This document shows positions 2-63,821 of a stretch of 64,000 bases of DNA, piece by piece. Location: positions 1-64,000 of the IMG/VR virus record IMGVR_UViG_3300047476_002078. One strand, written 5' to 3'. The first letter of the stretch is position 1. Each line of letters begins with the position of its first letter. Below the pieces are notes generated by a model, which saw nothing but the letters and a program-made list of their open reading frames with translations, searched no databases and was not told the DNA's origin. The position numbers were made by a program, and so were the translations under genes.

Positions 2-892
2 ACTGGAGTCCAAGGCGAAACTGGTGTTCAAGGTGAAACAGGAGTCCAAGGCGAAACTGGAGTACAGGGAGCCACAGGCGTTCAAGGTGAAACTGGAGTT
101 CAGGGAACAACTGGAGTCCAAGGAACCACAGGTGTCCAAGGTCAAACAGGTGTTCAAGGTGAAACTGGGGTACAGGGAACAACTGGAGTCCAAGGTCAAA
201 CTGGAGTCCAAGGAACCACAGGTGTTCAAGGTGAAACTGGAGTACAGGGAACAACTGGAGTCCAAGGAACCACAGGTGTTCAAGGAACAACTGGGGTACA
301 AGGAGTCCAAGGTCAAACGGGTGTTCAAGGTGAAACAGGAGTCCAAGGAGCGACAGGAGTCCAAGGAACCACAGGAGTTCAAGGCATCCAAGGAAATACA
401 GGCGTACAGGGTGAAACTGGAGTTGACGGTTACACAGGGGTACAAGGAACAACTGGGGTACTAGGATTTACAGGTGTCCAAGGTGGAACAGGAGTCCAAG
501 GAGCAACAGGTCCAGCTTCATTAGCTAACAATGAAGCTTCTGCCACACTTGATACAACAACAACGAGTAGTTCCGATGTTTTAATGTCAGGAATGACTTT
601 ATCACCTTCGGCAGGTAAATATTTGGTGACTTTTAGTACCGTAATATCTCAAGATACTGTAGGAGCTTCTGTTTTTGTTAGTATTTATAAAGGCGGTTCA
701 CAGGTTTCTGGAAGTGAAAGAGTGATTCAACCTCGTAACTCTACAGGTAACTCAACTTTAAACACTATTCCTGTGGCGGTAAATGCCATAGTAACAGTGA
801 CTAACGGACAGTCTATAGATATTTACTGGAGAACTTCGGGCGGAACAGCAACAGCTAAAGCTAGAATTATTGATATTATAAAAATTGCGTAA
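2..892 (+). CDS. Collagen-like fibre protein (5' truncated) with a C-terminal globular domain
   Basis: Frame +2 is open from base 2 to the TAA at 892. It reads (G-V-Q-G-x-T)n to 517, then continues into the track ORF 584..892, which is in the same frame. Track ORF 24..464 is a shadow frame of the repeat. Confidence 0.9.
5..517 (+). repeat. 18-nt period collagen repeat, 57 Gly-X-Y triplets
   Basis: Gly codons stay in 9-nt register from 5 to 509; units such as ggtgttcaaggtgaaact. Confidence 0.95.
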
Positions 893-905
893 TTGGAGAA
901 AATAA

Positions 906-1967
906 ATGGCTGACATTAAGTATGATTATATTAAAGTAATTAACCCTACCCAACTTTCTGAAGAAATTAGAAAAAGCTCTATTGTAACAGCTTTAAGTTA
1001 TATTTCTACTGAGGGTGAAAACGTACAAATCTATTTTAAAAGTGCTCTCTCTCAATTAGATAAAGACACTTTGGATAGTTTAGTGTCAAATCATTTACCT
1101 GCCTCAGATTATACGGCTCCAATTAATAAGGAAAATATCCCAATCTTCGAGCCTTCTTTGAGAAGAGGTAGAGAAGGAACAGAAACTTTTACAATCGTTT
1201 CACATGATTTTTCTGATAGAACTACTTGGTATCAAAATTCTATTCAAGTTACAAACCAAAGTCTCAGTTTGGTAAGTGGTAACATGTATCAAGCACCTGT
1301 AGGAAAAAGACACTGGATTAATATACATAATCCTAAATTAACGCTAGATCATAATAAAGTTTTAGAAAAAGATGGAAGCTTATCAGCAATATCTCTTCGT
1401 GAAGTTAAAGTTTATTCAAACGGTACTTTACTAAATTCTTCGGAATATTCAGTAGATTTTGAAAATGGTTCAGTAAGTTTTAATTCCCCGCAAGCTGGAA
1501 GTATTTCAGCCGATTTTTGGCATAATGATGGAGTTAGCTCAAATAATTTAGCTGATTTTATTATCAAACCTCAAACAGGCTATACTTTAAGAATTCAACA
1601 CGTAGAAATTCAAGTATCAAAAAATATTGCTTTTAATGACACTATAATTTTTGAAACTTGGGCAGGAGCGAACTTAGAAAATTATGGAAATTTTAGCAGT
1701 TCTGTTTTTGATTTAGGGTTTGGAATATCAAGAGCCTATTACCGTTCAATTAAAGATTTAATAAATTGGTGTAATAACTCATATCCTGTAATTCCTGCGG
1801 CAGGAGAATTACAAAACGATGTGATGTGTTTTCCTTTTATTTTTCTTCTTTCTCCTGAATTAAATTATAAGCAAAAATCTTTGATTAGACTTTGCACTAA
1901 AAATGGAGTGGGAGTTGCAGCGGAGATGGCTACAGCGACTTTTTATATGGAAAAATCTCAGATTTAG
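906..1967 (+). CDS. Putative virion structural protein
   Basis: 353-aa ORF with RBS GGAG, lying between the collagen and tube-like genes; beta-rich, no enzyme motif. Confidence 0.5.
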   Translation: MADIKYDYIKVINPTQLSEEIRKSSIVTALSYISTEGENVQIYFKSALSQLDKDTLDSLVSNHLPASDYTAPINKENIPIFEPSLRRGREGTETFTIVSHDFSDRTTWYQNSIQVTNQSLSLVSGNMYQAPVGKRHWINIHNPKLTLDHNKVLEKDGSLSAISLREVKVYSNGTLLNSSEYSVDFENGSVSFNSPQAGSISADFWHNDGVSSNNLADFIIKPQTGYTLRIQHVEIQVSKNIAFNDTIIFETWAGANLENYGNFSSSVFDLGFGISRAYYRSIKDLINWCNNSYPVIPAAGELQNDVMCFPFIFLLSPELNYKQKSLIRLCTKNGVGVAAEMATATFYMEKSQI

Positions 1968-2102
1968 GCTGTATAAAATAATAGCATAATAAAAATGACA
2001 TAATGAGTTAGTTCTTTAGTGGGAACGTATAAAAATATAGATAATCAATTATTAAATCATTTATACAGACTTTAAGAACTTTTTTTATCGGAGTTTCATA
2101 TT

Positions 2103-2741
2103 ATGGCTATTCCTACAAATTCACGCATTTATCGTTCGGGGACAACTCCTCAGACACGATCAGTCGTAAGCAGTAAAAACAGAATTTTTGCTCCTGCGGC
2201 AGAAGGTAATCAATTACTTCAAATTGGAGCAATGGCAAGTTTTTCACCTAATGAATCACGAAATGTTGAACAGGTTAGAGGGATTGGTTACGGAGACATG
2301 ATTGCTGAACTTGTTCCGGGCGTAACAGAGGCAATGACTATTTCTGTCGTTAGAACTGCTTTATATCTTGCTAATGTTTTCCAAGTGTTTGGATACAAGT
2401 CAGGTACTTCAGGAGTTGTAAGATCATTAAGACATCATAAGTTCCCTTTTGATATAAAACATGAGCTTATTTTATCTTCTCTTACAGAAAATGCTACAGC
2501 TTCAGGCACTAAAGATTTAACAATATCAGGTCAAACTGTAAAAGCTCTCATCACTATTTTTGAGGGTTGTTGGATGACAAGCTGGAGCACCGAGTTTACT
2601 TCTGATGCTGCGATGGTTCAAGAAAACGTAGAAATTATTGTTACTGACGTTGTGGACGCTGACTCTACTTACAATGAATTTATTGATGCTGGTCTTGGAG
2701 GCAATGACGCTTACCAGTCTAACATTTACAAAGCTATTTAA
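2103..2741 (+). CDS. Putative tail tube protein
   Basis: 212 aa; SRNVEQVRGIGYGDMIAELVPG and a C-terminal EGCWMTSWS..AMVQENVEIIVTD pattern resemble large-myophage tube proteins; followed by a terminator and chaperone-like genes. Confidence 0.6.
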   Translation: MAIPTNSRIYRSGTTPQTRSVVSSKNRIFAPAAEGNQLLQIGAMASFSPNESRNVEQVRGIGYGDMIAELVPGVTEAMTISVVRTALYLANVFQVFGYKSGTSGVVRSLRHHKFPFDIKHELILSSLTENATASGTKDLTISGQTVKALITIFEGCWMTSWSTEFTSDAAMVQENVEIIVTDVVDADSTYNEFIDAGLGGNDAYQSNIYKAI

Positions 2742-2747
2742 TTTTTT

Positions 2748-2778
2748 AAGGGAGTAAAAGTTAATTTTTTACTCCCTT
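2748..2778 (+). terminator. Rho-independent hairpin
   Basis: aagggagtaaaa / ttttactccctt 12-bp stem right after the tube-like gene. Confidence 0.75.
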
Positions 2779-2795
2779 TAACTATAATATAAAAT

Positions 2796-3284: not shown

Positions 3285-3308
3285 TTGATCTAATGGGGTT
3301 TAATTTAG

Positions 3309-8902: not shown

Positions 8903-8933
8903 ATTTAATTATAGTTTAATTTTAATCAAAATT

Positions 8934-11750: not shown

Positions 11751-11963
11751 ATGAAATACTATCTAGTTATAAGAGATAAAAAAAATAAAAACTTAGACGT
11801 AAAAGAATATCCTACCATGAAAAAAGCTTCCGCAGTAAAAGAAGCTATGCTTAAAAGCGGTCATGAAGGGCAATTAGTAATAGGTTACGGAAGCTCAATG
11901 AATGATTTTTTAACATCATTTACAGAGTATCGACCAAAAAATTGGAAAGATTTAATTAAGTAA
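11751..11963 (+). CDS. Hypothetical protein, 4 bp downstream of the synthetase
   Basis: 70-aa ORF, tight operon spacing. Confidence 0.6.
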   Translation: MKYYLVIRDKKNKNLDVKEYPTMKKASAVKEAMLKSGHEGQLVIGYGSSMNDFLTSFTEYRPKNWKDLIK

Positions 11964-12573
11964 TTTTTTTGGCAGGTATTCCAACATAAATACCACTTTC
12001 TGTTAAATTTTTGACAACTGCGGATTGAGCACCAGTAATTACATTTTCTGATATACAAATTTTTTCTCGAACCGCTGTTCCTGTTCCCAAAGAGGAATAT
12101 TTTCCGATAACTGTGTTACCTGAAATGTGACAGCCCGGATTTGCTGTTACATAATCATCAATTACTGCGTCGTGCCCAACAGTACAGTTAAGATTCAAAA
12201 CAACGTAATCCCCGATTTTAACATTAGTAGTGATTATACACCCTGCGGTTATAATCCCTCCTACACCTATATCAGCATCTTGAACTAAAGCTTTTGGGTG
12301 AACAAATGTTTTCATTGGCTTTAATCCGCTTTTCAATGCTTTTTCTACCATTATTTTTTTAACTTCGGGATTACCTACACCGATTATAAATTCAGCATTT
12401 TGAAATGAATCAAAGTTCCAATTTTTAACAACCTTGTAACTTTTATTTTTTATAATTATTTCTTCAATATTTGTGAAATCATCCACAAAAATAAAATCAG
12501 CATTAAAAGAATCTAAGTGAAAAAAGACTTCCCTTGCAAATCCCCCTGCTCCAAGAATAACTATGTTTTTCAT
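11956..12573 (-). CDS. NeuD/PglD-family sugar acetyltransferase
   Basis: ILGAGGFAREV N-terminus, hexapeptide repeats, VGHD, C-terminal GIPAK. Confidence 0.9.
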   Translation of the reverse strand: MKNIVILGAGGFAREVFFHLDSFNADFIFVDDFTNIEEIIIKNKSYKVVKNWNFDSFQNAEFIIGVGNPEVKKIMVEKALKSGLKPMKTFVHPKALVQDADIGVGGIITAGCIITTNVKIGDYVVLNLNCTVGHDAVIDDYVTANPGCHISGNTVIGKYSSLGTGTAVREKICISENVITGAQSAVVKNLTESGIYVGIPAKKIT

Positions 12574-14654
12574 GAAAGAGCCTCAATAATTCCATTGAAA
12601 ACTTCATCCATTTCTTCATTTGTAATAGTTTCGTAAAACGGTATGCACAATATTCTGTCTGACATGTTTTCAGTTTTTGACAAGTCGTTAAATGCCAAAT
12701 TATCTTTGAAAAAAGGCTGTGCGTGAATAGGTATGTAGTATATTCTGGTGTTAATACCTTTTTTGTTCAAAGATTCAATAACTAAATTTCTTTCTTCTTT
12801 ATTTGATAAAATAATAGGGTAAACCTGATAACCTGAATTAATATTTTTAATTGTTTTTATTGAACTTGTAGAAAATTTTTGTTGATAGTAATCGTGTTTT
12901 TGCTTTTTAATATTTATTTTATTTTCAATAGTATCCATAACAGATAGACCTATAGCAGCATGAAATTCAGAGCATTTTGCATTTGTACCCGATAAGGTTG
13001 AAACATTATTGGTAAAACCAAAATTTATAATTTTTCTGCATTTCTCAATAAAATTTGAATTTTTACTGGTCACTAAGCACCCTTCACCAATACCAAAAGT
13101 TTTGGTTATATGCAGACTGAAAATTTCGCAATCTCCTGCCGACCCTAATTTTGTTTCGTCACTGTACGATGCTCCAAGTGCAGCCGCCGAATCAAAAATT
13201 AAAATTAATCCATGTTTATTAGCAAAGTCTTCGTACTTTTTATAATCACATGTGTAGCCGAGAGCCTGAACGACAATCATGGCTTTTGTATTGGCAGTTA
13301 ATTTTTTTTCTGCGTTTTTAATACATAAATGAATACCTTCTTCTTCAATATCAACTAAGACAGGATTACATTCAGCGTTTAATACAGAATGTGCTGTAGC
13401 AGAAAACGTAAAAGATGGAATTAAAATATCACAGTTCTTTAAATCATGTGCTTTTATAGCAACAGTTAATCCTATTGTTGCGTTATTCATTAAAACTGGG
13501 ACATTATCAAGATTGAGATAGGACTTGAACCTTTCCTCTAACATTTTTACACAGGGTCCGTTGTTAGAGAATGTATTTGATTCATAGGAATCTACTAAAT
13601 ATTTAGCCCAATCTTTGATTTGTGGTGGGTTAGGTTTTAAAACAGGTATCTTTAAAAAAAGATCAGAGTCATCAAAAAATTTACTGGCGTAATTTGGCAA
13701 ATTTTTAATGTCGAATCTTTCGTATCTTTCAGAGATTTCTAAATTCACTTTAGAATTTATCTGAATTTCACTTAAAGCAGAGCTAGATATTATTGAATTT
13801 GGGACATTTACTGTAAAATGGTCTTGTTCTATTTTGTAAACATTCAAACTTAACCCATTAACTGAAATAGAATCTTCTATCTTTAAATCAGCTAGTATCT
13901 CTGGGCAAGAAATTATAAATTCTTTTGATTCCTCTAAGTTGTTAATTGAAGATACAGTCCCTATATTTTTGATTTGACCAGCAAACATATTTCCCTTCCT
14001 ATTTTGTATATCAACCCCAAATATAGGGTATTTATCTAAATCTTTGAAATGCCATCCGATTATTTCACCATTAGATAAAGAATTTGATCTTAAATTATCT
14101 ACGTTATTGACCGTAAAATGAAAAAGAGGGTCAAAATTCTTTTTTAGACACATTAAATTTTTACTATCTTGAATATTATTTTGAATTTTCAAATTTAAAA
14201 AATATCTAAAATTTTGGAGCTTGAAAACAATAGGCTCCTGATTATCTGTAAATAAAGCATGAGCTTCTCTTGTCCAACTCATTAATGTTTGATTATTAAA
14301 AACGATATTATCTTCGGAGAGTATGACAATATCTTCCGGTTGTGCAGAAGATAGAGCTTCTGACAGTTTTGAATAGTGGTGCGTTAAATTTTCAACAAGT
14401 GAATTTTCTGAAGGTAAGTCTATGACGCTGTACAAAATTTTATCTTTATACTTATCAAAAATGTCTTTATTTTCTTCAAACAGTAGAGCTTTCGGCTTTC
14501 CGTTATAATCTTGGTTACATTCTACGAAAACAAAATAATCAACGATGGAAAGTTCATAAACTAATGTTTCTAAAACTGTTAGGGTATGTTTACCGTAATT
14601 TACAATAGGTACACATAAAAAAACTTTTTTTCCAAATTTATTGCTTAATTCCAT
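12570..14654 (-). CDS. Fusion: GT17-like domain + riboflavin-synthase-alpha-like barrel + DegT/DnrJ sugar aminotransferase
   Basis: N: DYFVFVECN..NGKPK, GWHF; aa 223-306: MFAGQIKNIGTV..DSISVNG..VNLE; C: PSFTFSATA, FDSAAALG, SLHITKTFGIGEGC. Confidence 0.85.
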   Translation of the reverse strand: MELSNKFGKKVFLCVPIVNYGKHTLTVLETLVYELSIVDYFVFVECNQDYNGKPKALLFEENKDIFDKYKDKILYSVIDLPSENSLVENLTHHYSKLSEALSSAQPEDIVILSEDNIVFNNQTLMSWTREAHALFTDNQEPIVFKLQNFRYFLNLKIQNNIQDSKNLMCLKKNFDPLFHFTVNNVDNLRSNSLSNGEIIGWHFKDLDKYPIFGVDIQNRKGNMFAGQIKNIGTVSSINNLEESKEFIISCPEILADLKIEDSISVNGLSLNVYKIEQDHFTVNVPNSIISSSALSEIQINSKVNLEISERYERFDIKNLPNYASKFFDDSDLFLKIPVLKPNPPQIKDWAKYLVDSYESNTFSNNGPCVKMLEERFKSYLNLDNVPVLMNNATIGLTVAIKAHDLKNCDILIPSFTFSATAHSVLNAECNPVLVDIEEEGIHLCIKNAEKKLTANTKAMIVVQALGYTCDYKKYEDFANKHGLILIFDSAAALGASYSDETKLGSAGDCEIFSLHITKTFGIGEGCLVTSKNSNFIEKCRKIINFGFTNNVSTLSGTNAKCSEFHAAIGLSVMDTIENKINIKKQKHDYYQQKFSTSSIKTIKNINSGYQVYPIILSNKEERNLVIESLNKKGINTRIYYIPIHAQPFFKDNLAFNDLSKTENMSDRILCIPFYETITNEEMDEVFNGIIEALS

Positions 14655-16167: not shown

Positions 16168-16809
16168 ATGATTAGTATTATTACAAGCGTAAATGACCAA
16201 GAGCAATATGAACAATTTATGATGCCTAGTATGAACAGGCTTCAGAAATTTCTTATGGATTCTAATCTTCCTACTCTGGATATAGTAAAAGTTTCTGGTT
16301 CAGAGTCTATCGGCAAGAATTACAATGAAGGCATAAGAAAAGCCATCTACAAGGTAAAAGTTTTTATTCACCAAGATGTAGATATGCTAGAAATAGATTG
16401 GGCTTTTAAACTTCTAAAAATTTTTGCTGATTACCCAGATGTGGGATTAGTAGGATTGGTAGGAACCGTAAATTTTCCGAATAGAGGGTTTTGGTGGACT
16501 TCTGGAAGAGAATTTATTCGTGGAGAGCTTTGGTCAGGAAAAGAAAAAGCTGATTGGACTTTTTTGCCTGTGATTGCCCCGACAACAGTAGAATGTATTG
16601 ATGGCTTTTTCATGGCAACAAATAGAGACATTCTATGGGATGAGGACATTAAAGGTTTTCATTGTTATGATATGGACTACTCTCGTACAATTACTAAAAA
16701 CGGTTTAAAAATAATGGTCATGCCTCATAAATCTTGGCATATTGGAGAAATTCGAGAGGCAAAACACGAGCATTTATTTGAAACTTACTATAAAAAATGG
16801 AATTTATGA
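16168..16809 (+). CDS. GT-A glycosyltransferase-like protein
   Basis: YNEGI..A, FIHQD, IDGFFMA and FHCYDMD motifs. Confidence 0.8.
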   Translation: MISIITSVNDQEQYEQFMMPSMNRLQKFLMDSNLPTLDIVKVSGSESIGKNYNEGIRKAIYKVKVFIHQDVDMLEIDWAFKLLKIFADYPDVGLVGLVGTVNFPNRGFWWTSGREFIRGELWSGKEKADWTFLPVIAPTTVECIDGFFMATNRDILWDEDIKGFHCYDMDYSRTITKNGLKIMVMPHKSWHIGEIREAKHEHLFETYYKKWNL

Positions 16810-17717
16810 AAATAGCAGTTTTTTGGGGTGGAAGACATACTTTGCCCGGTGCTTGCGATGAAAATACTTGGTACAGTTTTTACAATTCTGGTTGGAAGTA
16901 CGGATTTGAAAGTTTAGGGCACTCTGTACATTATTTTTCATGGGATGACCATGAAGATAGATCAGGATATGATCTTTACATTTACGCTCCGGGGTTTTTA
17001 ACAAATTTAACTTATCATCCAAAAATTTATCATCCGAACGTATTTTTTACTGAAGAGGCTAGTTGTGCAGTTTCTTGGGCGGCTTCTCACAGTTACTACT
17101 ACGATGCGGTCACATTTCTTGATTACATAAATTGGAAAGCTGTAAAACATATAGGCGTTAATAACGCATATTGGGTGCCCGGTGCAGTTGACCCGACAGT
17201 GTTTAAAAATTTGAATCAGGAAAGAATATATAATACAGCGTTTTTAGGTTCTTATGATGATAATGTTAAAATCATTAATGGTAAGACACGATTAGATTTT
17301 ATACGAGCTATTGACGCTCATAATAAACCTTCAATGGTAGCCAGAGGTTATTACGCATTTGAAGCTAATAAGATTTGGAATGTTACTAAAATAGGTGTCG
17401 ATGTACCGATAGTTGAGTTCTGTTCTTTTAGACTTTTTCAAATAATTGCGTCAGGGGCTTTCTGTATTACTCGAAAAACTAGATTGGATAGTGGAATATC
17501 ACAACTTCTTGAACCTGATATGTATGACACTTATAACGACATAGATGATCTTGTTTTTAATGTAGCTCCGTATTGGATAGTTAAAGACCAAAAACGGGAG
17601 AAACTATGTAAGACTGCTCAAGAGTTTGTTCTCCAAAATCATACTTTTAAAAATCGTGCAGAGCAAATATTAAAAATAGCTGGTCTTATGGAAGGAAAAA
17701 TTCCGTATCAAGGATAA
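16806..17717 (+). CDS. GT-B glycosyltransferase (CgeB-like C-terminal domain)
   Basis: AVDPTVF, AFLGS, RLFQIIASGAF and HTFKNRAEQIL motifs; ATGA overlap gives a start at 16806. Confidence 0.78.
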   Translation: MKIAVFWGGRHTLPGACDENTWYSFYNSGWKYGFESLGHSVHYFSWDDHEDRSGYDLYIYAPGFLTNLTYHPKIYHPNVFFTEEASCAVSWAASHSYYYDAVTFLDYINWKAVKHIGVNNAYWVPGAVDPTVFKNLNQERIYNTAFLGSYDDNVKIINGKTRLDFIRAIDAHNKPSMVARGYYAFEANKIWNVTKIGVDVPIVEFCSFRLFQIIASGAFCITRKTRLDSGISQLLEPDMYDTYNDIDDLVFNVAPYWIVKDQKREKLCKTAQEFVLQNHTFKNRAEQILKIAGLMEGKIPYQG

Positions 17718-17722: not shown

Positions 17723-17953
17723 ATGGCATCTCCTTATGAAAAAGAGGTAATTGATATTCTTTTAAAAACAAAAGGAAAAGCTGTGTGCTTTTTGGTTTTG
17801 GATGGCTCAAAAGGAACTAGCTTTGAAGTAAGGTCTGTTGATGAAAAATACATGCGGAGTCTGCCAAAAATTTTAATAGAAATAGCCAGTAAAATTGAAG
17901 GCGAATTGAACGAAAAAGATTTAAAGAAGAAAATGGAAAATTTAGATGTTTGA
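17723..17953 (+). CDS. Hypothetical protein
   Basis: 76-aa ORF inside the operon. Confidence 0.6.
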   Translation: MASPYEKEVIDILLKTKGKAVCFLVLDGSKGTSFEVRSVDEKYMRSLPKILIEIASKIEGELNEKDLKKKMENLDV

Positions 17954-18575
17954 TCTTAATTATCAAAACCCTTATAATCCTTACGTAACTAAGACTCAAG
18001 AATTTGGAAATTTTAAATTTGAGAGTTTATCCATAGAAGGTTTAGTTATTATTACTCCTAAAATCTATGGAGACAGTAGAGGCTACTTCCTTGAAACTTA
18101 TAATGAATACGCATTTTTAAACGCTGGGATACCTACACAGTTTAAACAAGATAATCAAAGTTATTCAAGTAAAGGTGTACTTAGAGGGATGCACATACAA
18201 AACCCTACCTTTCAAGGAAAGCTTGTAAGATGTAATAGCGGATTAGTTTATGATGTTGCAATTGATTTAAGAAAAGGTAGTAAAACTTTTGGTCATTTTG
18301 CTGGAATTTTATTAGACCCGAAAATTAAAAATATGTTCTATGTTCCTGAAGGATTTGCACACGGGTTTTTAGCTTTAGAAGATTCTGAGTTTGTTTATAA
18401 ATGCTCTGAAACTTGGAAACCTAACGAAGACCTCACGGTTTCTTATGATTGTTTTGGTGCTCCTTGGTTAGATATTGCGAATAAATACGATATTTCAGAA
18501 TTTTTAACTTCTGTTAAAGACCGCCAAAATGCTATTAGTGTTGAACAATATCGAGTAATGTACTGCTTGGAGTAA
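17946..18575 (+). CDS. rfbC: dTDP-4-dehydrorhamnose 3,5-epimerase
   Basis: DSRGYFLETY, QDNQSYS..GVLRGMH, DVAIDLR and YVPEGFAHGF motifs. Confidence 0.92.
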   Translation: MFDLNYQNPYNPYVTKTQEFGNFKFESLSIEGLVIITPKIYGDSRGYFLETYNEYAFLNAGIPTQFKQDNQSYSSKGVLRGMHIQNPTFQGKLVRCNSGLVYDVAIDLRKGSKTFGHFAGILLDPKIKNMFYVPEGFAHGFLALEDSEFVYKCSETWKPNEDLTVSYDCFGAPWLDIANKYDISEFLTSVKDRQNAISVEQYRVMYCLE

Positions 18576-28934: not shown

Positions 28935-29159
28935 ATGCAAAAAGATGATGATTTTAGAAGAATTACTTCTATGCCTTTAGCTAAAGCGTTAAAAAATCCT
29001 CATACCGCTTCGGACTGGCTGGCAGAAAAAATGAATCTTGAACCACATCAAGTACATATTTCAAAAACAAGTGAAGATGAAATGGATACATATCTTGAAG
29101 GTTCATTATTGCTTCAAGGGGTTTCCTCTTTTAATTTTAAGGTCAAAATAAAAAAATGA
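28935..29159 (+). CDS. Hypothetical protein
   Basis: 74 aa, ATGA-coupled to the next gene. Confidence 0.55.
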   Translation: MQKDDDFRRITSMPLAKALKNPHTASDWLAEKMNLEPHQVHISKTSEDEMDTYLEGSLLLQGVSSFNFKVKIKK

Positions 29160-30295
29160 TAGCAGTTGTTCTTTCTGAGAAAAACGAATGTCAAAAAAGA
29201 TTAGCTTTCGTAAAATCTAAATTATACCAAAACGGTTTAAATTGTATCGTTATTCAAGATATTTGGGAAATGGAAAAATTAATCCCTTTTCTTTACTCAA
29301 TTGGGGACTTCCCTTTTTTGTTTTTTAAAAGTCCTTGGGAATGGATAGAAAAACCAAAAGAGATATTAGAGTTTCATGCCTCTAACACAGGATTCGACAG
29401 TGTAGTTGTTAGTGGGGATATTGTTACTTATATTCCATCAAGAGTGACTGTATTTCGAGATACTCTTATTAATTTTAAACAATTATATAACCAAGAGTTT
29501 TATAATTTTTATGCAAAAAATTCTCAAAAAGTAATTGATAAGCCAAACTATGCCCCTCACATATTTTTGACTACACATAATAGACATACCTATTTAGAAT
29601 TAACCCTAAACTCGCTTTTATTTAATGTGAGTGAGTCAACTCCAATAACTTTATTACTGAATGAACCTACAGAAGAAGTTTACAAAACAGCGTTAAAATT
29701 TTCTCAAAAAAGACAAATTGAAATTTTACATATAGAAAAAAACTCATTCTATTCTTCAATAAATTTAGCTGTTCAGTGGTATAACCCAGACATATTTATG
29801 GTATTTGAGGATGACTTTATCCTGCCTCCAACGGCAAAAGAATATTATCCAAATTGGGAGTATCATTTTGCCAGAAGGTTACAAGAATTTGACTTAGTTG
29901 GTTGGAGTCCTATTTTAGATAATGGTCCGACAATTCATAGATTACCTAGAATAGAATCAAAGCCTTTTGGTCAGTGGTATTACGGAAATAAATCTGAAAA
30001 ACCTTTACTATTAGGCAACGCTTTAATGATTAGAAAAAATTTTTGGTTAGAATCTTTAAAATTTATGGCTGAATCAGGGGATGAGAATAAATGGTACACT
30101 CCGCTAGATCACACGTTACATAAAAATGCTAAGAAATATTGTATGCCTAGTTTAAGAGGTTATCATATCGGATGGAATCAAACTTTGGATTATAATTTTA
30201 AAGCTCCTACAAATTTTGACCCTCCTTTAAAAAACACAGTTACTAGCATAAATACGGGTGAAAAAAGAGAGTTCAACTTACAGGATATTCTATGA
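29156..30295 (+). CDS. GT2-like glycosyltransferase with N-terminal extension
   Basis: LTTHNRHTYLELTLNSL, VFEDDF and HIGW motifs. Confidence 0.7.
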   Translation: MIAVVLSEKNECQKRLAFVKSKLYQNGLNCIVIQDIWEMEKLIPFLYSIGDFPFLFFKSPWEWIEKPKEILEFHASNTGFDSVVVSGDIVTYIPSRVTVFRDTLINFKQLYNQEFYNFYAKNSQKVIDKPNYAPHIFLTTHNRHTYLELTLNSLLFNVSESTPITLLLNEPTEEVYKTALKFSQKRQIEILHIEKNSFYSSINLAVQWYNPDIFMVFEDDFILPPTAKEYYPNWEYHFARRLQEFDLVGWSPILDNGPTIHRLPRIESKPFGQWYYGNKSEKPLLLGNALMIRKNFWLESLKFMAESGDENKWYTPLDHTLHKNAKKYCMPSLRGYHIGWNQTLDYNFKAPTNFDPPLKNTVTSINTGEKREFNLQDIL

Positions 30296-32037: not shown

Positions 32038-32517
32038 ATGAAAATTTTTGATTGCTTCATGTTTAATAATCAGATTGAAATTTTTAACAAAAGAGTCGAA
32101 AAACATTTTGATTATGTAGAAAGCTTTGTGATAGCTCAAGGAAAATTCAATTACGACGGTTCAGAAAAAGAATTTGTAGATTTATATGGCAAAAAATTAA
32201 CTCATATAATTAATGAAGAGAGAATAAGCTCCAAGACAATTCAACGTAATTTAATTATGAAAGGATTAGAAAAATGTAATTCTGAAGACATAATTATTTT
32301 TTCAAGAATAAATGAGTTTGTTGATTTTGATAGATTATTACCTTTTATTAAAGTTTTAGATTTTTTTCCAATATCTTTAGGATTATCAAACAGAGGTAAT
32401 CAAGCCGGACCTATAGTTACAAAGTACAAATATTTAAAATCTTTTACCCTGTCCCAATTAAGGAACCAAAGAAATTTTTTGTTAAAATTAGAAAACGGCT
32501 CTTTTTATGAGAATTGA
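32038..32517 (+). CDS. Short or degenerate GT17-like glycosyltransferase
   Basis: MKIFDCFMFNN..I..R, FVIAQG..YDG..K and QRN..MKGL motifs; the expected DxD is absent. Confidence 0.6.
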   Translation: MKIFDCFMFNNQIEIFNKRVEKHFDYVESFVIAQGKFNYDGSEKEFVDLYGKKLTHIINEERISSKTIQRNLIMKGLEKCNSEDIIIFSRINEFVDFDRLLPFIKVLDFFPISLGLSNRGNQAGPIVTKYKYLKSFTLSQLRNQRNFLLKLENGSFYEN

Positions 32518-37655: not shown

Positions 37656-38021
37656 ATGAAATTTAATTTTGAATACCACGGAGAAAACTACGATTTCGAT
37701 GTGATTATTGAAAAACAACTCAACAGTTATTCAATAATTTCCACAAATAAAGAAATTTCTATGAAATCTGAAGTAATGTTTCAAGAAAATGGGGATATAA
37801 GAATACTAAAACCTGTAAGTTTTATTTTAAAAGACCCAAAGATACAAATTAGTGACTACGTAATAAAAGTTTTTGTAAAAGCTACAAGGATAGCCTCAGT
37901 TTTAACCAATTTTCCTGAATTAAGCGTGGCAGATGCCAAAAATTTAATAGACCTGTTTGGTGACGAAGTGGCTATAAACTGCTCCGCTTTGAACATGAAA
38001 TTTTGTATGGAAATCCACTAA
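37656..38021 (+). CDS. Hypothetical protein
   Basis: 121 aa, RBS AAGGGG. Confidence 0.6.
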   Translation: MKFNFEYHGENYDFDVIIEKQLNSYSIISTNKEISMKSEVMFQENGDIRILKPVSFILKDPKIQISDYVIKVFVKATRIASVLTNFPELSVADAKNLIDLFGDEVAINCSALNMKFCMEIH

Positions 38022-39196
38022 TATTTACTGATTATATGAAAAAAACAAACATTTTGTTAAGTTATCTAGTTACGGGTCTTCCAGATGAAGGGAAAACATC
38101 TTTTTCCATAGCTTTAGCCAAAATTTCGGGTGATTACTTTGTTAGTGGGTGTCAGCCTATTTTTAACCCTAAAAGCATAGTAATAATGTTGGATAGATCA
38201 TTTTACTTATTTATAGGAGAAAACCCAGCAACTACAAAATATTCAATAACTACAGCTATTCACAAAGATGCCAAGCTGGACAAAGACGAGTTTCTAAAAG
38301 TAGTAATTAAAGAAATTGATGAAATGTTAGAATACAACCCGAATCAGATCATAATAGAAGGCTACGTTTTAAATTTTATTAAAGAAGAAGTAGAAAATTA
38401 TTTAAAAGATAAAACATTATCTGCTCACATTAGAATGAGAAATTATGTAATACATTATTTGGATGAGGTTTATTCAACTAAGAGGTGCGAAAGTCCGAAT
38501 AGTTATACAGATGAAATAGTTGTAGCTTATAGAGATGCTATTCAATTGTTAAAACAAAAATTAGTTGAAGTTCACGGCAAAAACATTTTATCTCAAGTAA
38601 ATTATCAAGCTTTTCCTGACTTAGGAATAAATGTTAAAAATTCAGACAGCATTAAAAAATTTAAGAGCTTAAATCTAAAAAATTTACAAGACAAAAAAGT
38701 TTTGGACGTTGGGTGTAACCATGGGAGATTTTGCATTGAATCAATTAGGCTAGGTGCTTCCGTAGTTCATGGCATAGATAGTAACAAAAATTTTCTACAT
38801 ACTGCTTCAGCTTTAAATAATATTTTTTATCGCTATAACATTTCTTTTTTTGAATGTGATTTTTTAAATTTTAATCAGTCTAATTATGACATTATTATTG
38901 CTTGTTCCGTGTTTCATTATTTTAAAGAAAATCAACCTGAATTTTTTAAGAAAGCTTATGATTTGTTGGTTAAAGATGGTGTCTTAATTCTTGAAGCAGG
39001 AATATCTGATTTGCATCCAGATAAAGAATTTATTGAAAAGTATCAAAGAGGTGTGGACCCTACACCTTGTCACTTTCCAAATCATTTAGCTTTACTTGCC
39101 ATGGCTCAAGGCTTTAAGTGTGAATATCTAGGTAGTTCCGTTAATCAGCATGGGGATAGAATAAACAGGAAAGTTTATCATTTAAGGAAATTATAA
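38003..39196 (+). CDS. Class I SAM methyltransferase with N-terminal P-loop-like domain
   Basis: VTGLPDEGKTS; KVLDVGCNHG..GID and SVFHY motifs; start may be the ATG at 38036. Confidence 0.78.
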   Translation: MYGNPLIFTDYMKKTNILLSYLVTGLPDEGKTSFSIALAKISGDYFVSGCQPIFNPKSIVIMLDRSFYLFIGENPATTKYSITTAIHKDAKLDKDEFLKVVIKEIDEMLEYNPNQIIIEGYVLNFIKEEVENYLKDKTLSAHIRMRNYVIHYLDEVYSTKRCESPNSYTDEIVVAYRDAIQLLKQKLVEVHGKNILSQVNYQAFPDLGINVKNSDSIKKFKSLNLKNLQDKKVLDVGCNHGRFCIESIRLGASVVHGIDSNKNFLHTASALNNIFYRYNISFFECDFLNFNQSNYDIIIACSVFHYFKENQPEFFKKAYDLLVKDGVLILEAGISDLHPDKEFIEKYQRGVDPTPCHFPNHLALLAMAQGFKCEYLGSSVNQHGDRINRKVYHLRKL

Positions 39197-41462: not shown

Positions 41463-41569
41463 CTTTTCCTCCCTAAATTGAACCGTATTTTAATAATCAT
41501 CAAACTTATTTAATGCTTAATCAAGTTAAAAATGATAGATTTTACCGTAAATATATTTTGCGTGTGGTT

Positions 41570-42466
41570 ATGAATTGGATTCGAGGACAAAAATTTCAAA
41601 ATAAGATAATTCATTTGGCGATAAATTCATATCGTTTAGGGGATAATATTGCTAGTTTCCCAACCCTTAGATATTTAGTAAGTAATGGAAAAAATTATGG
41701 AATAAATTATAAAGTTCATGTAATAAATCAACATTTAAACGACTTATATCGTTTAGCCTTGCCTGAATTAGTATTTGATAATTTTACAGGCAGCAATTTT
41801 CCACATTTAACTCATTTTGCCTTTAGTAATGTACCTACATTTGCCTCGAATTTAGTCGATTACATATCCTTTAATTTGGCTCAAACTAGCCTTTCAAAAG
41901 AAAATAAAAAGTATCCTTTGCTAAACCCTCCAGCGTTTAATTTTGATTTTGATGTGTCGAAATCAATAATTATTTCAGTAGGTCACACTTGGGAAAACAA
42001 AAAATTTACAACTAAATTTATTGAAGATATTTCCGATTGGGTGAATTCAAAAGGGTATTTGCCAGTTCTAGTAGGTACTACTAATAAAAATTTTGACATA
42101 ATGCAATACGCATCATCCTGTGAAAAATCTATCAATTTAGTAGATAAGACAAACTTGATAGAATTGTTATATTTAATTTCTAACTCTAAAGCTGTGATAA
42201 CTCAGGATAACGGAATACTTCACCTTTCAGCACTAACAAAAACCCCAATAGTAGTCGGATTTACAGCAACGATGCCTGAACATGCCCTCCCAATTAGAGA
42301 GGACATATTTCCAATTGAAACAGGTGTAGATTGTAAATTTTGTGCGGTAAAAGGCATCCATACTTTTAAAAGTTTTAACATTTGCCCTTATGGAGATTAT
42401 CTATGTATAGAGGATTTAAAAGCAGAAAAATTTATTAAAGTTTTAAGTGAAAAAGTTTTTAAATGA
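41570..42466 (+). CDS. GT9 (heptosyltransferase-like) glycosyltransferase
   Basis: RLGDNIA..P.LR, W..KKF and ITQDNGILHLSA motifs; the in-frame ATG at 41570 is preferred over 41513. Confidence 0.8.
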   Translation: MNWIRGQKFQNKIIHLAINSYRLGDNIASFPTLRYLVSNGKNYGINYKVHVINQHLNDLYRLALPELVFDNFTGSNFPHLTHFAFSNVPTFASNLVDYISFNLAQTSLSKENKKYPLLNPPAFNFDFDVSKSIIISVGHTWENKKFTTKFIEDISDWVNSKGYLPVLVGTTNKNFDIMQYASSCEKSINLVDKTNLIELLYLISNSKAVITQDNGILHLSALTKTPIVVGFTATMPEHALPIREDIFPIETGVDCKFCAVKGIHTFKSFNICPYGDYLCIEDLKAEKFIKVLSEKVFK

Positions 42467-62360: not shown

Positions 62361-62382
62361 AAATTGAATCTATAATAAAGCT

Positions 62383-62550
62383 ATGGATTGTAAACATGAT
62401 TACAAAAATGCTTATACCCAAGTTCTTTATGAAGATAATAAAATTATCGAAACTGTAGAATTTTGCCCTAAATGTAAACAAGTTATCAGACATGAAATAA
62501 TCTCAAAAGATCAAAAATCAGATACTTACGACATCAAATGCGAACATTAG
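62383..62550 (+). CDS. Small Cys/His protein, not in the track
   Basis: MDCKHDY...FCPKC..., 55 aa. Confidence 0.5.
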   Translation: MDCKHDYKNAYTQVLYEDNKIIETVEFCPKCKQVIRHEIISKDQKSDTYDIKCEH

Positions 62551-62590
62551 TTAATAGTTTTGGTTATAGGAATCTTTAAAGGAGATACAG

Positions 62591-62701
62591 ATGAAATGGA
62601 TATTCTTATTATCAGTTATCTTGTCTTGTAGCCACGTTGAAGAAAAACCTTGTTCTGAAAACTGTAATCATCACAAACATGTTTATGAGAGGGCTAGATG
62701 A
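62591..62701 (+). CDS. Small lipoprotein, not in the track
   Basis: AGGAG RBS; MKWIFLLSVILS-C lipobox-like; ATGA-coupled to the next gene; 36 aa. Confidence 0.55.
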   Translation: MKWIFLLSVILSCSHVEEKPCSENCNHHKHVYERAR

Positions 62702-62913
62702 AAACAAAATTAATCTTAGCCTTTCTGTTATTTTTTAGTAGTTGCGGAAAACCGATAGTTGATAAATCCGATGAAGTTCAAAGAGAAGTTTATTCTTCAG
62801 AGTATGATTTAAAAAGAGAGGTTCTCAATTACAATTTTACAAGGTATTCTAACAAAGAAATAACATGCTATACCTTCAATGGTTTTGATTTGGATTGTAA
62901 ATGGAAGTTTTAG
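62698..62913 (+). CDS. Small lipoprotein
   Basis: MKTKLILAFLLFFSS-C lipobox-like. Confidence 0.65.
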   Translation: MKTKLILAFLLFFSSCGKPIVDKSDEVQREVYSSEYDLKREVLNYNFTRYSNKEITCYTFNGFDLDCKWKF

Positions 62914-63821
62914 TTACAGGCGGAGCAGGATTTATCGGAAGTCATTTATGTGACCATTTAATCAGTAAAGGTTGCAATGTTACGGTAATTGATGACTTAT
63001 CAACAGGCAGAAATAAAAATTTATCCAAAAAAGTCGATTTTATTCAAGCAGATATTTCAAAGCAAGAGACGTGGAATAGTTTAAACAAAAATTTTAATGC
63101 TTTGTTTCATTTAGCCGCAAAAACTTCGGTAACAGAATCGGTAAAAATACCGTCATTCTATTTTCAGCAAAATGTTATTACGTCACAATACATTTATGAA
63201 TGGAGCATAAAAAACAACGTAAAGAATGTAATTTATGCAAATACCGCTGGAGCCTTGTACGGTGACGCTTTTGATAAAGGTCATAATGAAAGCTCCTTAC
63301 CTAAGCCTAAGTCTCCTTATGGTGCGACTAAATACGCCTGCGAGCTTTTTTTAATGTCTCTCCCAATAAATTTTACTTCCATAAGATTAGCCAACGTATA
63401 TGGGGAGAGACAAATAACCAAAGGTGAAGCAGGAGTAATCCCTATTTTTACGGAAAATATTCACGCTGGTAAAGATTGCATTATTTTCGGTAAAAATAAA
63501 ATGCGTGACTACATTCATGTAACAGATGTTTGTGAATATTTTGTTAGAGCCTTTGAAAAAATGCTCCCATCACAGGGATGGAAAGAGATTTTTAATGTAG
63601 GGACAGGCGTAAAAACTGAAGATGAGAAAGTTTTTAATACTATTTCTAGTGTAATTAAAAAGCCTGCTCAAATGTTATATGCTGATAAGAGAGATGGGGA
63701 AATAGATGTAACTTATTTAGACATCTCTAAAGCAAAAGAGATTTTAGAATATGAACCAAAAATAGAATTTGTTCAAGGTTGCTCGAATACTGTCAGATAT
63801 TATTTAGAAAATGAGTTTTGA
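62901..63821 (+). CDS. NAD-dependent nucleotide-sugar epimerase/dehydratase (GalE/WcaG-like SDR)
   Basis: VTGGAGFIGSH, YGATK, NVYGERQ and RDYIHV.D motifs. Confidence 0.93.
   Translation: MEVLVTGGAGFIGSHLCDHLISKGCNVTVIDDLSTGRNKNLSKKVDFIQADISKQETWNSLNKNFNALFHLAAKTSVTESVKIPSFYFQQNVITSQYIYEWSIKNNVKNVIYANTAGALYGDAFDKGHNESSLPKPKSPYGATKYACELFLMSLPINFTSIRLANVYGERQITKGEAGVIPIFTENIHAGKDCIIFGKNKMRDYIHVTDVCEYFVRAFEKMLPSQGWKEIFNVGTGVKTEDEKVFNTISSVIKKPAQMLYADKRDGEIDVTYLDISKAKEILEYEPKIEFVQGCSNTVRYYLENEF

What the first reader, a model, noticed from the sequence alone, without database searches (positions are those of the whole stretch)
2..63821. Dispersed, near-complete glycan-building toolkit: possible phage-made virion glycocoat
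Seen: about eight GT-like domains (12570, 16168, 16806, 29156, 30292, 32038, 32980, 41570), RmlC, a DegT aminotransferase adjacent to a NeuD/PglD acetyltransferase, an SDR epimerase/dehydratase and a methyltransferase. Known: a DegT + hexapeptide acyltransferase pair makes N-acyl-amino-dideoxy sugars (viosamine in Mimivirus fibrils, anthrose on BclA), and some mycobacteriophages glycosylate their virions. Inference: this phage builds a rhamnose/aminosugar glycan on its collagen fibre or capsid. DNA or host-LPS modification are alternatives.
Basis: partly seen in the sequence, partly recalled or inferred. Interest (0 to 1): 0.75.

Follow-up and report, generated by a model that had tools for sequence, protein, structure and literature searches.

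The report
Phage collagen fibre with sugar-coating genes
A 356-kb freshwater phage encodes a giant threonine-rich collagen-like tail fibre, next to it a relative of the enzyme that sugar-coats the collagen-like hairs of bacterial spores, and its own rhamnose and amino-sugar pathways, so it probably makes a glycosylated virion fibre without host enzymes.

Summary
The window is the first 64 kb of a 355,874-bp tailed-phage genome from lake metagenomes. Eight GT-like ORFs, RmlC, a DegT fusion, a NeuD/PglD/VioB-type acetyltransferase, an SDR and a methyltransferase lie at the stated places; three GT calls are weak.

Outside the window are rmlA-rmlB-rmlD flanked by two GT4 genes, and three large multidomain GTs: about 13 GT genes in all.

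The decisive evidence also lies outside the window. A roughly 3,082-aa, nearly proline-free collagen-like gene, (GVQG[E/A/T]T)n with Thr at 46% of Y positions, spans the record ends. It sits inside the tail-gene module. Divergent from it is a GT2-TPR gene.

This pair is conserved in three diverged relatives. The closest cellular homologues of the GT are the SgtA-type TPR-GT2 enzymes of spore-forming Bacillota; half of 80 such loci have a GXT collagen gene within 1.5 kb. C. difficile SgtA is shown to put O-GlcNAc on Thr of BclA3 collagen repeats.

No lipid-carrier machinery, membrane segments or hydroxymethylase were found.

Best reading: a BclA-like fibre glycosylated by the phage itself. That rhamnose or amino sugar ends on it is inferred. 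New variant of a known kind; interest 0.66.

The parts
2..892 (+). 3' end of the giant collagen-like fibre gene. The gene starts at genome 347431 and is about 3,082 aa across the record ends. This part holds the last GXY repeats and a 125-aa C-terminal head.
   Evidence: Pfam Collagen E 4e-28. The frame is continuous across the 87-bp terminal repeat. The head model (pLDDT 66) matches BclA C-domain and TNF/C1q jelly rolls.
2103..2741 (+). Virion structural protein in the tail-tube position. It marks the collagen gene as lying inside the tail module.
   Evidence: 46% identical to Tunturiibacter phage Tunturi_5 gp329, annotated 'virion structural protein', which lies downstream of that phage's tail sheath gene. 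It also matches Bacillus phage G gp180. Atlas features resemble tail-tube families.
11956..12573 (-). NeuD/PglB/VioB-type sugar N-acetyltransferase.
   Evidence: Pfam PglD_N plus Hexapep. NCBIfam TIGR03570 at 153 bits, cut-off 161. A 62%-identical copy is in relative G001.
12570..14654 (-). Three-domain fusion: GT17-like domain, single lumazine/riboflavin-synthase barrel, and DegT-type NDP-4-keto-6-deoxyhexose aminotransferase.
   Evidence: Pfam. The nearest solved structure is DesI (2PO3), and the H-x-T-K PLP lysine is conserved. The barrel matches lumazine protein and riboflavin synthase. Only two homologues with this architecture were found among 5.8 billion proteins.
16168..16809 (+). GT-A glycosyltransferase (Glyco_tranf_2_5).
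   Evidence: Pfam E 2.7e-41.
16797..17717 (+). GT-B glycosyltransferase (Glyco_trans_1_2).
   Evidence: Pfam E 7e-12. In relative L039 a 59%-identical copy lies with RmlC in a block about 6.7 kb from the collagen/GT2-TPR pair.
17946..18575 (+). RmlC, dTDP-4-dehydrorhamnose 3,5-epimerase.
   Evidence: Pfam E 2e-54. NCBIfam equivalog at 183 bits, cut-off 156.
29156..30295 (+). Weak GT2-like protein.
   Evidence: Pfam GT2 at 19 bits, below the cut-off. A 32%-identical homologue is in G001.
30292..31086 (+). GT8-family glycosyltransferase.
   Evidence: Pfam E 3e-8, 34 bits against a cut-off of 24.
32038..32517 (+). Weak GT17-like ORF (159 aa).
   Evidence: Pfam at 20 bits, below the cut-off of 26.
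32980..33699 (+). Probable GT2-like protein.
   Evidence: No Pfam hit. Atlas features at 0.98, with 195 shared features, match phage and bacterial GT2 clusters. This is a lead only.
38003..39196 (+). Class I SAM methyltransferase (domain at residues 218-372). Its substrate is unknown.
   Evidence: Pfam Methyltransf_25/12/23/11. No NCBIfam equivalog.
41513..42466 (+). Divergent GT9 (heptosyltransferase-like) glycosyltransferase.
   Evidence: Pfam E 8e-12. The only close homologues (91% and 70% identical) are metagenomic sequences, taken to be of this phage lineage. No close bacterial LPS enzyme was found.
62901..63821 (+). SDR nucleotide-sugar epimerase/dehydratase, GalE-like, with no assignable specificity.
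   Evidence: Pfam Epimerase E 1e-48. Its best NCBIfam matches, GalE at 163 bits and RmlB at 143 bits, are both under their cut-offs.

Best explanation
The phage makes a very long, trimeric, BclA-like collagen fibre as part of its tail and glycosylates it in the host cytoplasm with its own soluble enzymes.

**Steps that rest on homology or genomic context**
- The fibre has a 62-aa N-terminal anchor, about 2,650 residues of (GVQG[E/A/T]T)n with roughly 400 Thr in the Y position, and a TNF/C1q-like head.
- The divergently placed GT2-TPR enzyme is an SgtA-family protein glycosyltransferase. It would start O-glycans on the repeat threonines.
- The phage supplies dTDP-L-rhamnose through RmlA, RmlB, RmlC and RmlD.
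- It also encodes an aminotransferase and an N-acetyltransferase. These fit synthesis of an N-acetyl-4-amino-4,6-dideoxyhexose from the RmlB product, but the exact substrate and sugar are not assigned.

**Inferred steps**
- The neighbouring three-domain GT, the two GT4 enzymes flanking the rml operon, the GT domain fused to DegT and some window GTs extend the glycan with these sugars, possibly with methylation.
- The glycan stabilises a proline-free triple helix.
- The glycan forms the outer surface of a fibre up to about 0.76 um long (2,655 residues at 0.286 nm each).
For: **Virion context**
- Phage identity is shown by TerL, portal and PolA matches.
- Major head, sheath and terminator genes are homologous to annotated Tunturi_5 genes.
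- The collagen gene is flanked by a gp6-like baseplate wedge gene, a weak BW3TFN-like ORF (21 bits, below the cut-off of 27) and a virion structural protein in the tube position.

**Fibre composition.** Thr is 46% and Gln 49% of Y positions, and Pro is under 1%.

**Conserved gene pair**
- The pair of collagen and GT2-TPR, with the three-domain GT beside GT2-TPR (about 6 kb away in L039), is conserved in G001 at 57% identity, where the collagen ORF is at least 6,593 aa.
- It is conserved on a 345-kb contig, where the neighbour is 3,526 aa.
- It is conserved in L039, whose collagen has the same N-terminal domain. There the window's GT1_2-RmlC block lies about 6.7 kb away.

**Link to the SgtA family**
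- The nearest cellular homologues are 35-42% identical TPR-GT2 proteins of Bacillota.
- The phage clade is monophyletic and, with midpoint rooting, nests among them.
- Of the 80 best genome loci, 47 have a collagen-like ORF within 6 kb and 40 within 1.5 kb. Thr is 72% of their Y positions.
- Collagen-like ORFs occur at 0.185 per kb near the GT against 0.024 per kb farther out.
- C. difficile SgtA is 358 aa with GT-A plus TPR domains. Its primer-encoded N-terminus MITISLCMI is identical to that of family members. It transfers beta-O-GlcNAc to Thr of BclA3 GPT repeats in vitro (PMC7157674).
- The closest solved relatives are labelled GmaR (E 2e-25) and SunS. From my own knowledge, both glycosylate proteins or peptides.
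- The DXD motif is invariant in the family alignment.

**Sugar supply**
- The rml operon with its flanking GT4 genes is conserved in G001.
- A C. beijerinckii BclA locus combines the same parts: SgtA-like GT, GT2_5, hexapeptide transferase, DegT and RmlA-like genes.
Against: - There is no biochemical or proteomic evidence; everything rests on homology and gene context.
- The more distant relative G004 has the GT2-TPR and three-domain GT pair beside the tube-like gene, but no collagen gene in its 70-kb fragment.
- The other toolkit genes are rarely co-located with SgtA-like loci in Bacillota: 0 to 10 of 80 loci per gene.
- GT8 and GT9 are families best known from LPS core synthesis.
- The C-terminal head does not hit Pfam BclA_C, and its model is of only moderate confidence.
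- Short-read contigs break inside the collagen repeats. The gene's length and the closure of the record are therefore unverified.
Confidence: 0.55

Rival explanations
1. Part or all of the GT set remodels the host envelope (LPS core, O-antigen or capsule) during infection. The purpose would be to block superinfection or receptor recognition, as proposed for GT-rich tail-fibre regions of pelagic myophages.
For: GT8 and GT9 are LPS-core families. PMC7029224 reports glycosyltransferases within the hypervariable tail-fibre region of pelagimyophages and reads them as O-chain modification. The rml and amino-sugar pathways are typical O-antigen supply routes.
Against: No Bac_transf, WecA/MraY-type or Wzy genes were found. 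None of 23 glycan proteins has a membrane segment. The GT9's only close homologues are metagenomic proteins, apparently of this phage lineage, rather than a recent host gene. The GT beside the collagen gene belongs to a protein-glycosylating family.
Confidence: 0.2
2. The GTs glycosylate other virion proteins (tail tube, capsid) as in mycobacteriophages, and the adjacency to collagen is incidental.
For: In G004 the GT2-TPR and three-domain GT pair sits beside the tube-like gene with no collagen gene in the fragment. Mycobacteriophage capsid and tail-tube C-termini carry glycans (cited in PMC12619734).
Against: The collagen adjacency is conserved in three diverged relatives. The same GT family is tied to GXT collagen genes in 40 to 47 of 80 Bacillota loci. 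G004 is estimated to be only 42% complete.
Confidence: 0.15
3. The sugars decorate phage DNA, as a hypermodified base that protects against restriction.
For: Phage GTs are classically DNA-modifying, and diverse DNA glycans have been reported recently (reference cited). Thymidylate kinase and ThyA lie near the sugar cluster.
Against: The only thymidylate-synthase-family gene is a canonical ThyA above the equivalog cut-offs, with no hydroxymethylase paralogue. Two C5 cytosine DNA methylases imply ordinary cytosine in the DNA. To my knowledge, dTDP-rhamnose or N-acyl amino sugars on DNA have no precedent.
Confidence: 0.04
4. There is no coherent system. The GTs and sugar genes are unrelated accessory genes accumulated in a large genome, some of them inactive.
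For: The genes lie in at least six places. Three GT calls are weak. Specificities cannot be assigned.
Against: The rml operon, its flanking GT4 genes, the acetyltransferase, the collagen-adjacent GTs and the GT1_2-RmlC block are conserved at about 32-65% identity in relatives. Catalytic motifs are kept: DXD and the PLP lysine. RmlC and RmlD pass equivalog cut-offs.
Confidence: 0.06

Closest known systems
C. difficile SgtA-BclA3 and the wider TPR-GT2 / BclA-type collagen loci of spore-forming Bacillota
   Same: - The GT has the same GT-A plus TPR architecture, at 35-42% identity, with a shared N-terminal motif and DXD motif.
- It lies next to a collagen-like gene whose Y position is mostly Thr.
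- The fibre ends in a TNF/C1q-like head (fold level only).
- Some loci also hold DegT, hexapeptide transferase, GT2_5 and RmlA-like genes.
   Different: - It is encoded by a phage, inside a tail-gene module, not by a sporulating cell.
- The fibre is about 3,082 aa (at least 6,593 aa in a relative) against roughly 200 to 1,900 aa.
- The repeat is GVQGxT, almost without proline, rather than GPT.
- The GT has an extra C-terminal extension of about 130 aa.
- Pfam BclA_C is not detected by sequence.
B. anthracis BclA glycan (rhamnose oligosaccharide capped by anthrose; rml and ant operons)
   Same: The ingredient list is the same:
- a dTDP-rhamnose pathway;
- a 4-aminotransferase plus N-acyltransferase acting on dTDP-4-keto-6-deoxyglucose;
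- a methyltransferase;
- several GTs;
- a Thr-rich collagen acceptor.

The anthrose-BclA link is stated in PMC9614988. The pathway details are from my own knowledge.
   Different: No enoyl-CoA-hydratase-type AntA was sought or seen. The acyl group is predicted to be acetyl (NeuD/VioB family). The actual glycan is unknown.
Mimivirus fibril glycosylation cluster (R141, L136, L142, L780 and neighbouring GTs)
   Same: - A virus encodes its own rhamnose and N-acetyl-4-amino-4,6-dideoxyhexose synthesis and uses the products on virion fibrils.
- A biosynthetic enzyme is fused to a GT domain. In Mimivirus, L142 is an acetyltransferase plus GT; here it is a GT plus aminotransferase.
- The sugar is methylated (PMC9614988).
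   Different: - The pathway is bacterial-type dTDP with separate RmlA-D enzymes, rather than UDP-based with a bifunctional enzyme.
- The host is a bacterium.
- The presumed acceptor is a collagen-like protein, not the GMC oxidoreductase R135.
Mycobacteriophage virion glycosylation (Freeman et al. 2023, as cited in PMC12619734)
   Same: Phage-encoded GTs modify virion proteins in the cytoplasm.
   Different: - There, one or two GTs use host sugar nucleotides on capsid and tail-tube C-termini.
- Here, there are about 13 GTs, autonomous sugar-nucleotide synthesis and a collagen repeat acceptor.
GT-rich hypervariable tail-fibre regions of pelagimyophages and cyanomyophages (PMC7029224)
   Same: These are aquatic myophages with many GTs and sugar genes among their tail-fibre genes.
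   Different: - Those authors read the genes as host O-chain modification.
- No SgtA-type GT paired with a collagen gene was reported there.
- The present phage is unrelated in size and in TerL sequence.

Membership tests
SgtA-type TPR-GT2 collagen O-glycosyltransferase (phage gene 345778-347256, outside the window) | N-terminal GT-A (GT2) domain with a DXD motif | tested here: met
   Pfam Glycos_transf_2 E 6e-23. D83, D85 and D86 are invariant in a 23-sequence alignment.
SgtA-type TPR-GT2 collagen O-glycosyltransferase (phage gene 345778-347256, outside the window) | TPR domain after the catalytic domain | tested here: met
   Pfam TPR_1/2/8 at residues 205-354. PDB consensus-TPR proteins also match.
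SgtA-type TPR-GT2 collagen O-glycosylferase family (phage gene 345778-347256, outside the window) | Sequence homology to the Bacillota family that contains C. difficile SgtA | tested here: met
   35-42% identity over about 73% of the protein, E down to about 5e-83. With midpoint rooting, the phage clade nests among Bacillota sequences, nearest the named Peptostreptococcaceae. Those members start MITISLCMI, as does SgtA's cloning primer. The full SgtA sequence itself was not available for alignment.
SgtA-type TPR-GT2 collagen O-glycosyltransferase (phage gene 345778-347256, outside the window) | Gene adjacent to a Thr-rich collagen-like acceptor gene | tested here: met
   The gap to the collagen gene is 174 bp, in divergent orientation. 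The arrangement is conserved in G001, L039 and the 345-kb contig.
SgtA-type TPR-GT2 collagen O-glycosyltransferase (phage gene 345778-347256, outside the window) | Transfers beta-O-GlcNAc from UDP-GlcNAc to Thr of collagen repeats | not testable with these tools
   This needs an enzyme assay.
BclA-type collagen-like surface glycoprotein | Central G-X-Thr collagen-like region | tested here: met
   2,655 residues lie in GXY repeats, with Thr at 46% of Y positions.
BclA-type collagen-like surface glycoprotein | C-terminal BclA_C (TNF/C1q-like) trimerising head | tested here: inconclusive
   Pfam BclA_C was not hit. The model has pLDDT 66. The top Foldseek hits are BclA C-domains (E 1e-4, TM 0.45). 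VIA-align gives Z 11.5 to a TNF-like lectin and 9.4 to BclA and F-BclA.
BclA-type collagen-like surface glycoprotein | Exosporium targeting through the N-terminal domain | tested here: not met
   The N-terminal 62 aa are shared only with phage relatives and have no match among deposited phages. The context is a phage tail module, so this is an analogue and not a member.
dTDP-L-rhamnose pathway (RmlABCD) | All four enzymes present | tested here: met
   RmlC scores 183 against 156 bits and RmlD 266 against 224, both over the equivalog cut-offs. RmlB scores 328 against 365 and RmlA 202 against 320; both are best matches but below the cut-offs.
Phage DNA glycosylation (hydroxymethyl-pyrimidine plus GT) | dCMP or dUMP hydroxymethylase of the thymidylate-synthase family | tested here: not met
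   There is a single family member, a canonical ThyA (458 bits, cut-off 327). C5 DNA methylases are present.
Lipid-carrier (Und-P) O-antigen or capsule assembly | Initiating phosphoglycosyl transferase and Wzy polymerase/ligase | tested here: not met
   PF02397, PF00953 and PF04932 are absent from the genome, while the control genomes were positive. The glycan proteins have no membrane segments. A Wzx flippase was not searched for.
Mycobacteriophage-type virion glycosylation | Glycans on capsid or tail-tube C-termini | not testable with these tools
   This needs virions and mass spectrometry.

The most novel reading that the evidence does not exclude
A lineage of huge freshwater phages carries micrometre-scale collagen-like tail fibres (0.76 um here; at least 1.7 um in a relative if fully helical). 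These fibres are densely O-glycosylated by an entirely phage-encoded system: an SgtA-like initiator, about a dozen extending GTs, and the phage's own dTDP-rhamnose and N-acetyl-amino-dideoxyhexose supply. On this reading the phage carries a spore-like 'hairy nap'. It would be a bacterial-virus counterpart of the Mimivirus fibril glycocalyx, with threonine glycosylation replacing hydroxyproline as the stabiliser of the triple helix.
Probability: 0.4. Interest if true: 0.8.

Novelty: new variant of a known kind. Interest (0 to 1): 0.66.

Why it matters
Protein glycosylation by phages is known from a few mycobacteriophages that use host sugar nucleotides. Autonomous glycan synthesis has been the hallmark of giant eukaryotic viruses.

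A phage with its own acceptor, initiating enzyme, extending enzymes and sugar-nucleotide pathways would extend that capacity to bacterial viruses.

It would also give a concrete alternative reading of the many unexplained GTs found among tail-fibre genes of aquatic phages, which are usually filed as host LPS modification.

It would supply a natural proline-free, glycosylation-dependent collagen of extreme length, of interest for collagen biophysics and biomaterials.

Finally, it links the SgtA family to collagen-like genes across Bacillota in numbers: 40 of 80 loci.

Tried and rejected
**Searches that found nothing**
- A DNA search of 8 kb of the sugar cluster against deposited phages found nothing.
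- Pfam Terminase_6N found no TerL; PHROGs did.
- A single-sequence scan for relatives of the DegT fusion in IMG/VR found none.
- The fusion's N-terminal half has only two homologues, both of the same lineage and synteny.
- DegT is absent from four related fragments, but these are only 11-42% complete, so this is uninformative.
- PHROGs and Pfam gave nothing for window ORFs 906, 2796, 3309 and 4572-8312, or for several large tail-region ORFs.
- ORF 31083 is not recognisable as a GT.
- The collagen N-terminal domain and C-terminal head have no tblastn match in deposited phages.

**Failed or inconclusive analyses**
- The single-sequence model of ORF 2103 failed (pLDDT 34), and ORF 2103 has no sequence match in the PDB. 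Its structural role rests on homologues annotated as virion proteins.
- Laying contigs on window 1-5000 did not verify the junction. Short-read contigs fragment inside the repeats.

**Ideas rejected**
- The 'moraphage' lineage (PMC12619734) is probably not this phage. Those phages use PolB and the paper does not mention collagen.
- I considered whether the 13 P4H-like oxygenases hydroxylate the collagen. This is unlikely as prolyl hydroxylation, because Pro is under 1% of X and Y positions.

**Not attempted**
- No complex prediction was run, because an enzyme-substrate contact is not a stable complex.

Full report
**What the window is.** The window is bases 1-64,000 of a single-contig IMG/VR virus record of 355,874 bp with 34% G+C. 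The record is a tailed phage.
- PHROGs finds a large terminase, a portal, a family-A DNA polymerase and a ribonucleotide reductase.
- The major head protein, head protease, tail sheath and tail terminator have homologues annotated as such in the 309-kb Tunturiibacter phage Tunturi_5.
- Near-identical sequence occurs in freshwater and lake metagenomes from several studies.
- The host is unknown.

**Checking the observation.**
- 11956-12573(-) is a NeuD/PglB/VioB-type acetyltransferase. It abuts 12570-14654(-).
- 12570-14654(-) is one 694-aa protein made of a GT17-like domain, a single riboflavin-synthase/lumazine barrel and a DegT aminotransferase.
- The closest solved relative of the DegT domain is DesI, and its PLP lysine is conserved.
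- 16168 (GT2_5), 16797 (GT1_2), 30292 (GT8) and 41513 (GT9) are sound GT calls.
- 29156 and 32038 score below the Pfam cut-offs.
- 32980 is GT2-like only by language-model features.
- RmlC (17946) passes its equivalog cut-off.
- The SDR (62901) and the methyltransferase (38003) are real, but their specificity cannot be assigned.
- ORF 31083, which lies between GTs, is not recognisable as one.

**What lies outside the window.** Searching the whole genome changes the picture.
- An rmlA-rmlB-rmlD operon sits at 229385-232044, flanked by two GT4-like genes at 228378 and 232061. RmlD is over its equivalog cut-off, and RmlA and RmlB are clear best matches. With RmlC in the window, the dTDP-L-rhamnose pathway is complete.
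- The RmlB product is also the usual substrate of DesI-type aminotransferases. N-acetylation would then give an N-acetyl-4-amino-4,6-dideoxyhexose. This step is an inference; the exact sugar cannot be called.
- Three more large GTs exist: 314883-317123 (GT2 plus GT2_5), 343440-345791 (GT4 plus GT2 plus GT4) and 345778-347256 (GT2 plus TPR).
- In all there are about 13 GT genes and 16 GT domains.

**The collagen gene.**
- Window 2-892 is the end of an ORF that starts at 347431 and is in frame across the 87-bp terminal repeat. The product is about 3,082 aa.
- It has a 62-aa N-terminal domain and then 2,655 residues of G-X-Y, essentially (GVQG[E/A/T]T)n.
- The Y position is Thr in 46% and Gln in 49% of triplets, and Pro is under 1%. 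There are two internal globular inserts.
- The 125-aa C-terminal head has a moderate-confidence model (pLDDT 66) that is a TNF/C1q-type jelly roll. BclA C-domains are the top Foldseek hits, and VIA-align gives Z 9.4-11.5 to TNF-like lectins, BclA and F-BclA.
- If fully triple-helical at 0.286 nm per residue, the stalk would be about 0.76 um long. This is an inference.
- Short-read contigs break inside the repeats, with word depth up to 50 times that of unique sequence. The repeat number and the circular closure are therefore unverified.

**The collagen gene sits in the tail module.**
- Upstream lie the tail terminator (320.4 kb), the sheath (322.2 kb), a gp6-like baseplate wedge (335.5 kb; PHROG E 9e-21) and a weak BW3TFN-like ORF at 341.7 kb (21 bits, below the cut-off of 27).
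- Downstream, window 2103-2741 is 46% identical to a Tunturi_5 virion structural protein that lies downstream of that phage's sheath gene. It also matches phage G gp180.

**The link between fibre and sugars.**
- The GT2-TPR gene is divergent from the collagen gene across 174 bp that carry back-to-back promoter-like sites. These are pattern matches only.
- The arrangement recurs in diverged relatives.
  - In G001 (155 kb, GT 57% identical, TerL 69%), the collagen ORF is at least 6,593 aa and the three-domain GT follows.
  - On a 345-kb contig, the neighbouring ORF is 3,526 aa.
  - In L039 (GT 60% identical), a 498-aa collagen has the same N-terminal domain, and the window's GT1_2-ORF-RmlC block lies about 6.7 kb away.
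- G001 also keeps the rml operon with both GT4 genes and the acetyltransferase.

**The wider family.**
- Beyond this lineage, the nearest homologues (35-42% identity) are TPR-containing GT2 proteins of about 357 aa from spore-forming Bacillota. In a tree the phage proteins are one clade that, with midpoint rooting, nests among them.
- I fetched the 80 best bacterial loci; all are Bacillota. Of these, 47 contain a collagen-like ORF within 6 kb and 40 within 1.5 kb, mostly as the immediate same-strand neighbour. Thr is 72% of the Y positions.
- Collagen-like ORFs occur at 0.185 per kb within 1.5 kb of the GT, against 0.024 per kb farther out.
- Two loci inspected in detail, from Priestia endophytica and C. 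beijerinckii, carry Collagen plus BclA_C genes next to the GT. The Clostridium locus also holds GT2_5, hexapeptide transferase, FdtA, DegT and RmlA-like genes.
- C. difficile SgtA belongs to this family.
  - It is 358 aa with GT-A plus TPR domains, and its gene lies beside bclA3.
  - Its primer-encoded N-terminus MITISLCMI is identical to that of Peptostreptococcaceae family members.
  - It adds beta-O-GlcNAc to Thr of BclA3 GPT repeats in vitro (PMC7157674).
- The closest solved structures are labelled GmaR and SunS. I know these as a flagellin O-GlcNAc transferase and a peptide S-glycosyltransferase.
- Among 80 IMG/VR loci with more distant homologues, 17 have a collagen-like ORF within 6 kb.

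**Alternatives.**
- Lipid-carrier glycan assembly is not supported. No Bac_transf, WecA-type or Wzy genes were found although the control genomes were positive. None of 23 glycan proteins has a membrane-like segment.
- DNA glycosylation is unlikely. There is one canonical ThyA and no hydroxymethylase paralogue, and there are two C5 DNA methylases.
- Action of GT8 or GT9 on the host LPS core remains possible. Such enzymes need no carrier machinery, although the GT9's only close homologues are metagenomic proteins, apparently of this phage lineage.
- The distant relative G004 has the two GTs beside the tube-like gene, with no collagen gene in its 70-kb fragment. Other virion proteins may therefore be acceptors as well.
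- The other toolkit genes are only sporadically co-located with SgtA-like loci in Bacillota. Their assignment to the fibre glycan is an inference from conservation within the phage lineage and from the BclA and Mimivirus precedents (PMC9614988).

**Verdict.** The best explanation is a BclA-like, phage-made and phage-glycosylated tail fibre.
- The initiating step is well supported by comparative evidence.
- The composition of the glycan and the roles of the other GTs are inferred.
- This is a new variant of a known kind: SgtA/BclA-type collagen glycosylation moved into a huge phage and joined to autonomous sugar-nucleotide synthesis.

Noticed in passing
window 34903-37641 and 49061-49717; also genome 104203, 173525, 174226, 207848, 233578, 266145, 266807, 280974: Thirteen paralogues of P4H-like 2OG-Fe(II) oxygenases, 12 of them with an HxD motif. 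One abuts the rml/GT4 operon, and its counterpart does so in relative G001. The collagen has under 1% proline, so their substrate is unexplained.
   Followed up: partly
window 12570-14654 (-), residues about 223-310: A single riboflavin-synthase/lumazine-protein barrel sits between the GT17-like and DegT domains. This three-domain architecture has only two homologues among 5.8 billion proteins, both on metagenomic contigs; the one examined has the same synteny.
   Followed up: partly
window 39196-41187 (+) and genome 86873-89050 (+); window 53593-54159 (-): Two large intact proteins with C-terminal PARP-type ADP-ribosyltransferase domains, and a NADAR-domain protein. This may be an ADP-ribosylation and reversal pair of unknown target.
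   Followed up: no
genome 80820-81758 and 81755-82834 (+): Two adjacent C5 cytosine DNA methyltransferases. They imply that the phage DNA carries ordinary cytosine.
   Followed up: no
window 1-87 = genome 355788-355874: The record's 87-bp 'direct terminal repeat' lies inside the collagen repeats. Short-read contigs of four runs fragment at window 1-355, with word depth up to 50 times that of the unique flank. The closure of the record and the collagen length may be assembly-dependent.
   Followed up: partly
G001 (IMGVR_UViG_3300020183_000008) 2-19780 (-): The relative's collagen-like ORF is at least 6,593 aa and runs off the contig. It has the same GVQGxT repeat and three 128-aa globular inserts that resemble one another.
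   Followed up: partly
window 10820-11746, 15081-15413, 50898-51248, 52450-52908, 55047-55496: Host-physiology genes unusual for a phage: a RelA/SpoT-domain protein, an IscA-like Fe-S assembly protein, HSP20, MgtC and an RRM RNA-binding protein.
   Followed up: no
window 32762-32968 (-): A 68-aa ORF on the opposite strand resembles the C-terminal 50 residues of the GT8 protein at 30292 (phmmer E 1.5e-9). It may be a remnant of a duplicated GT8.
   Followed up: no
345-kb relative contig (JGI 3300059473), gene after the GT2-TPR: The three-domain GT homologue there is 1,197 aa and carries an intein-splicing domain hit.
   Followed up: no
window 19036-21279 and 45144-46814: Two SNF2-family helicases, the first with an N-terminal DUF6011. 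There is also an FG-GAP repeat protein of 830 aa at 24080-26572.
   Followed up: no
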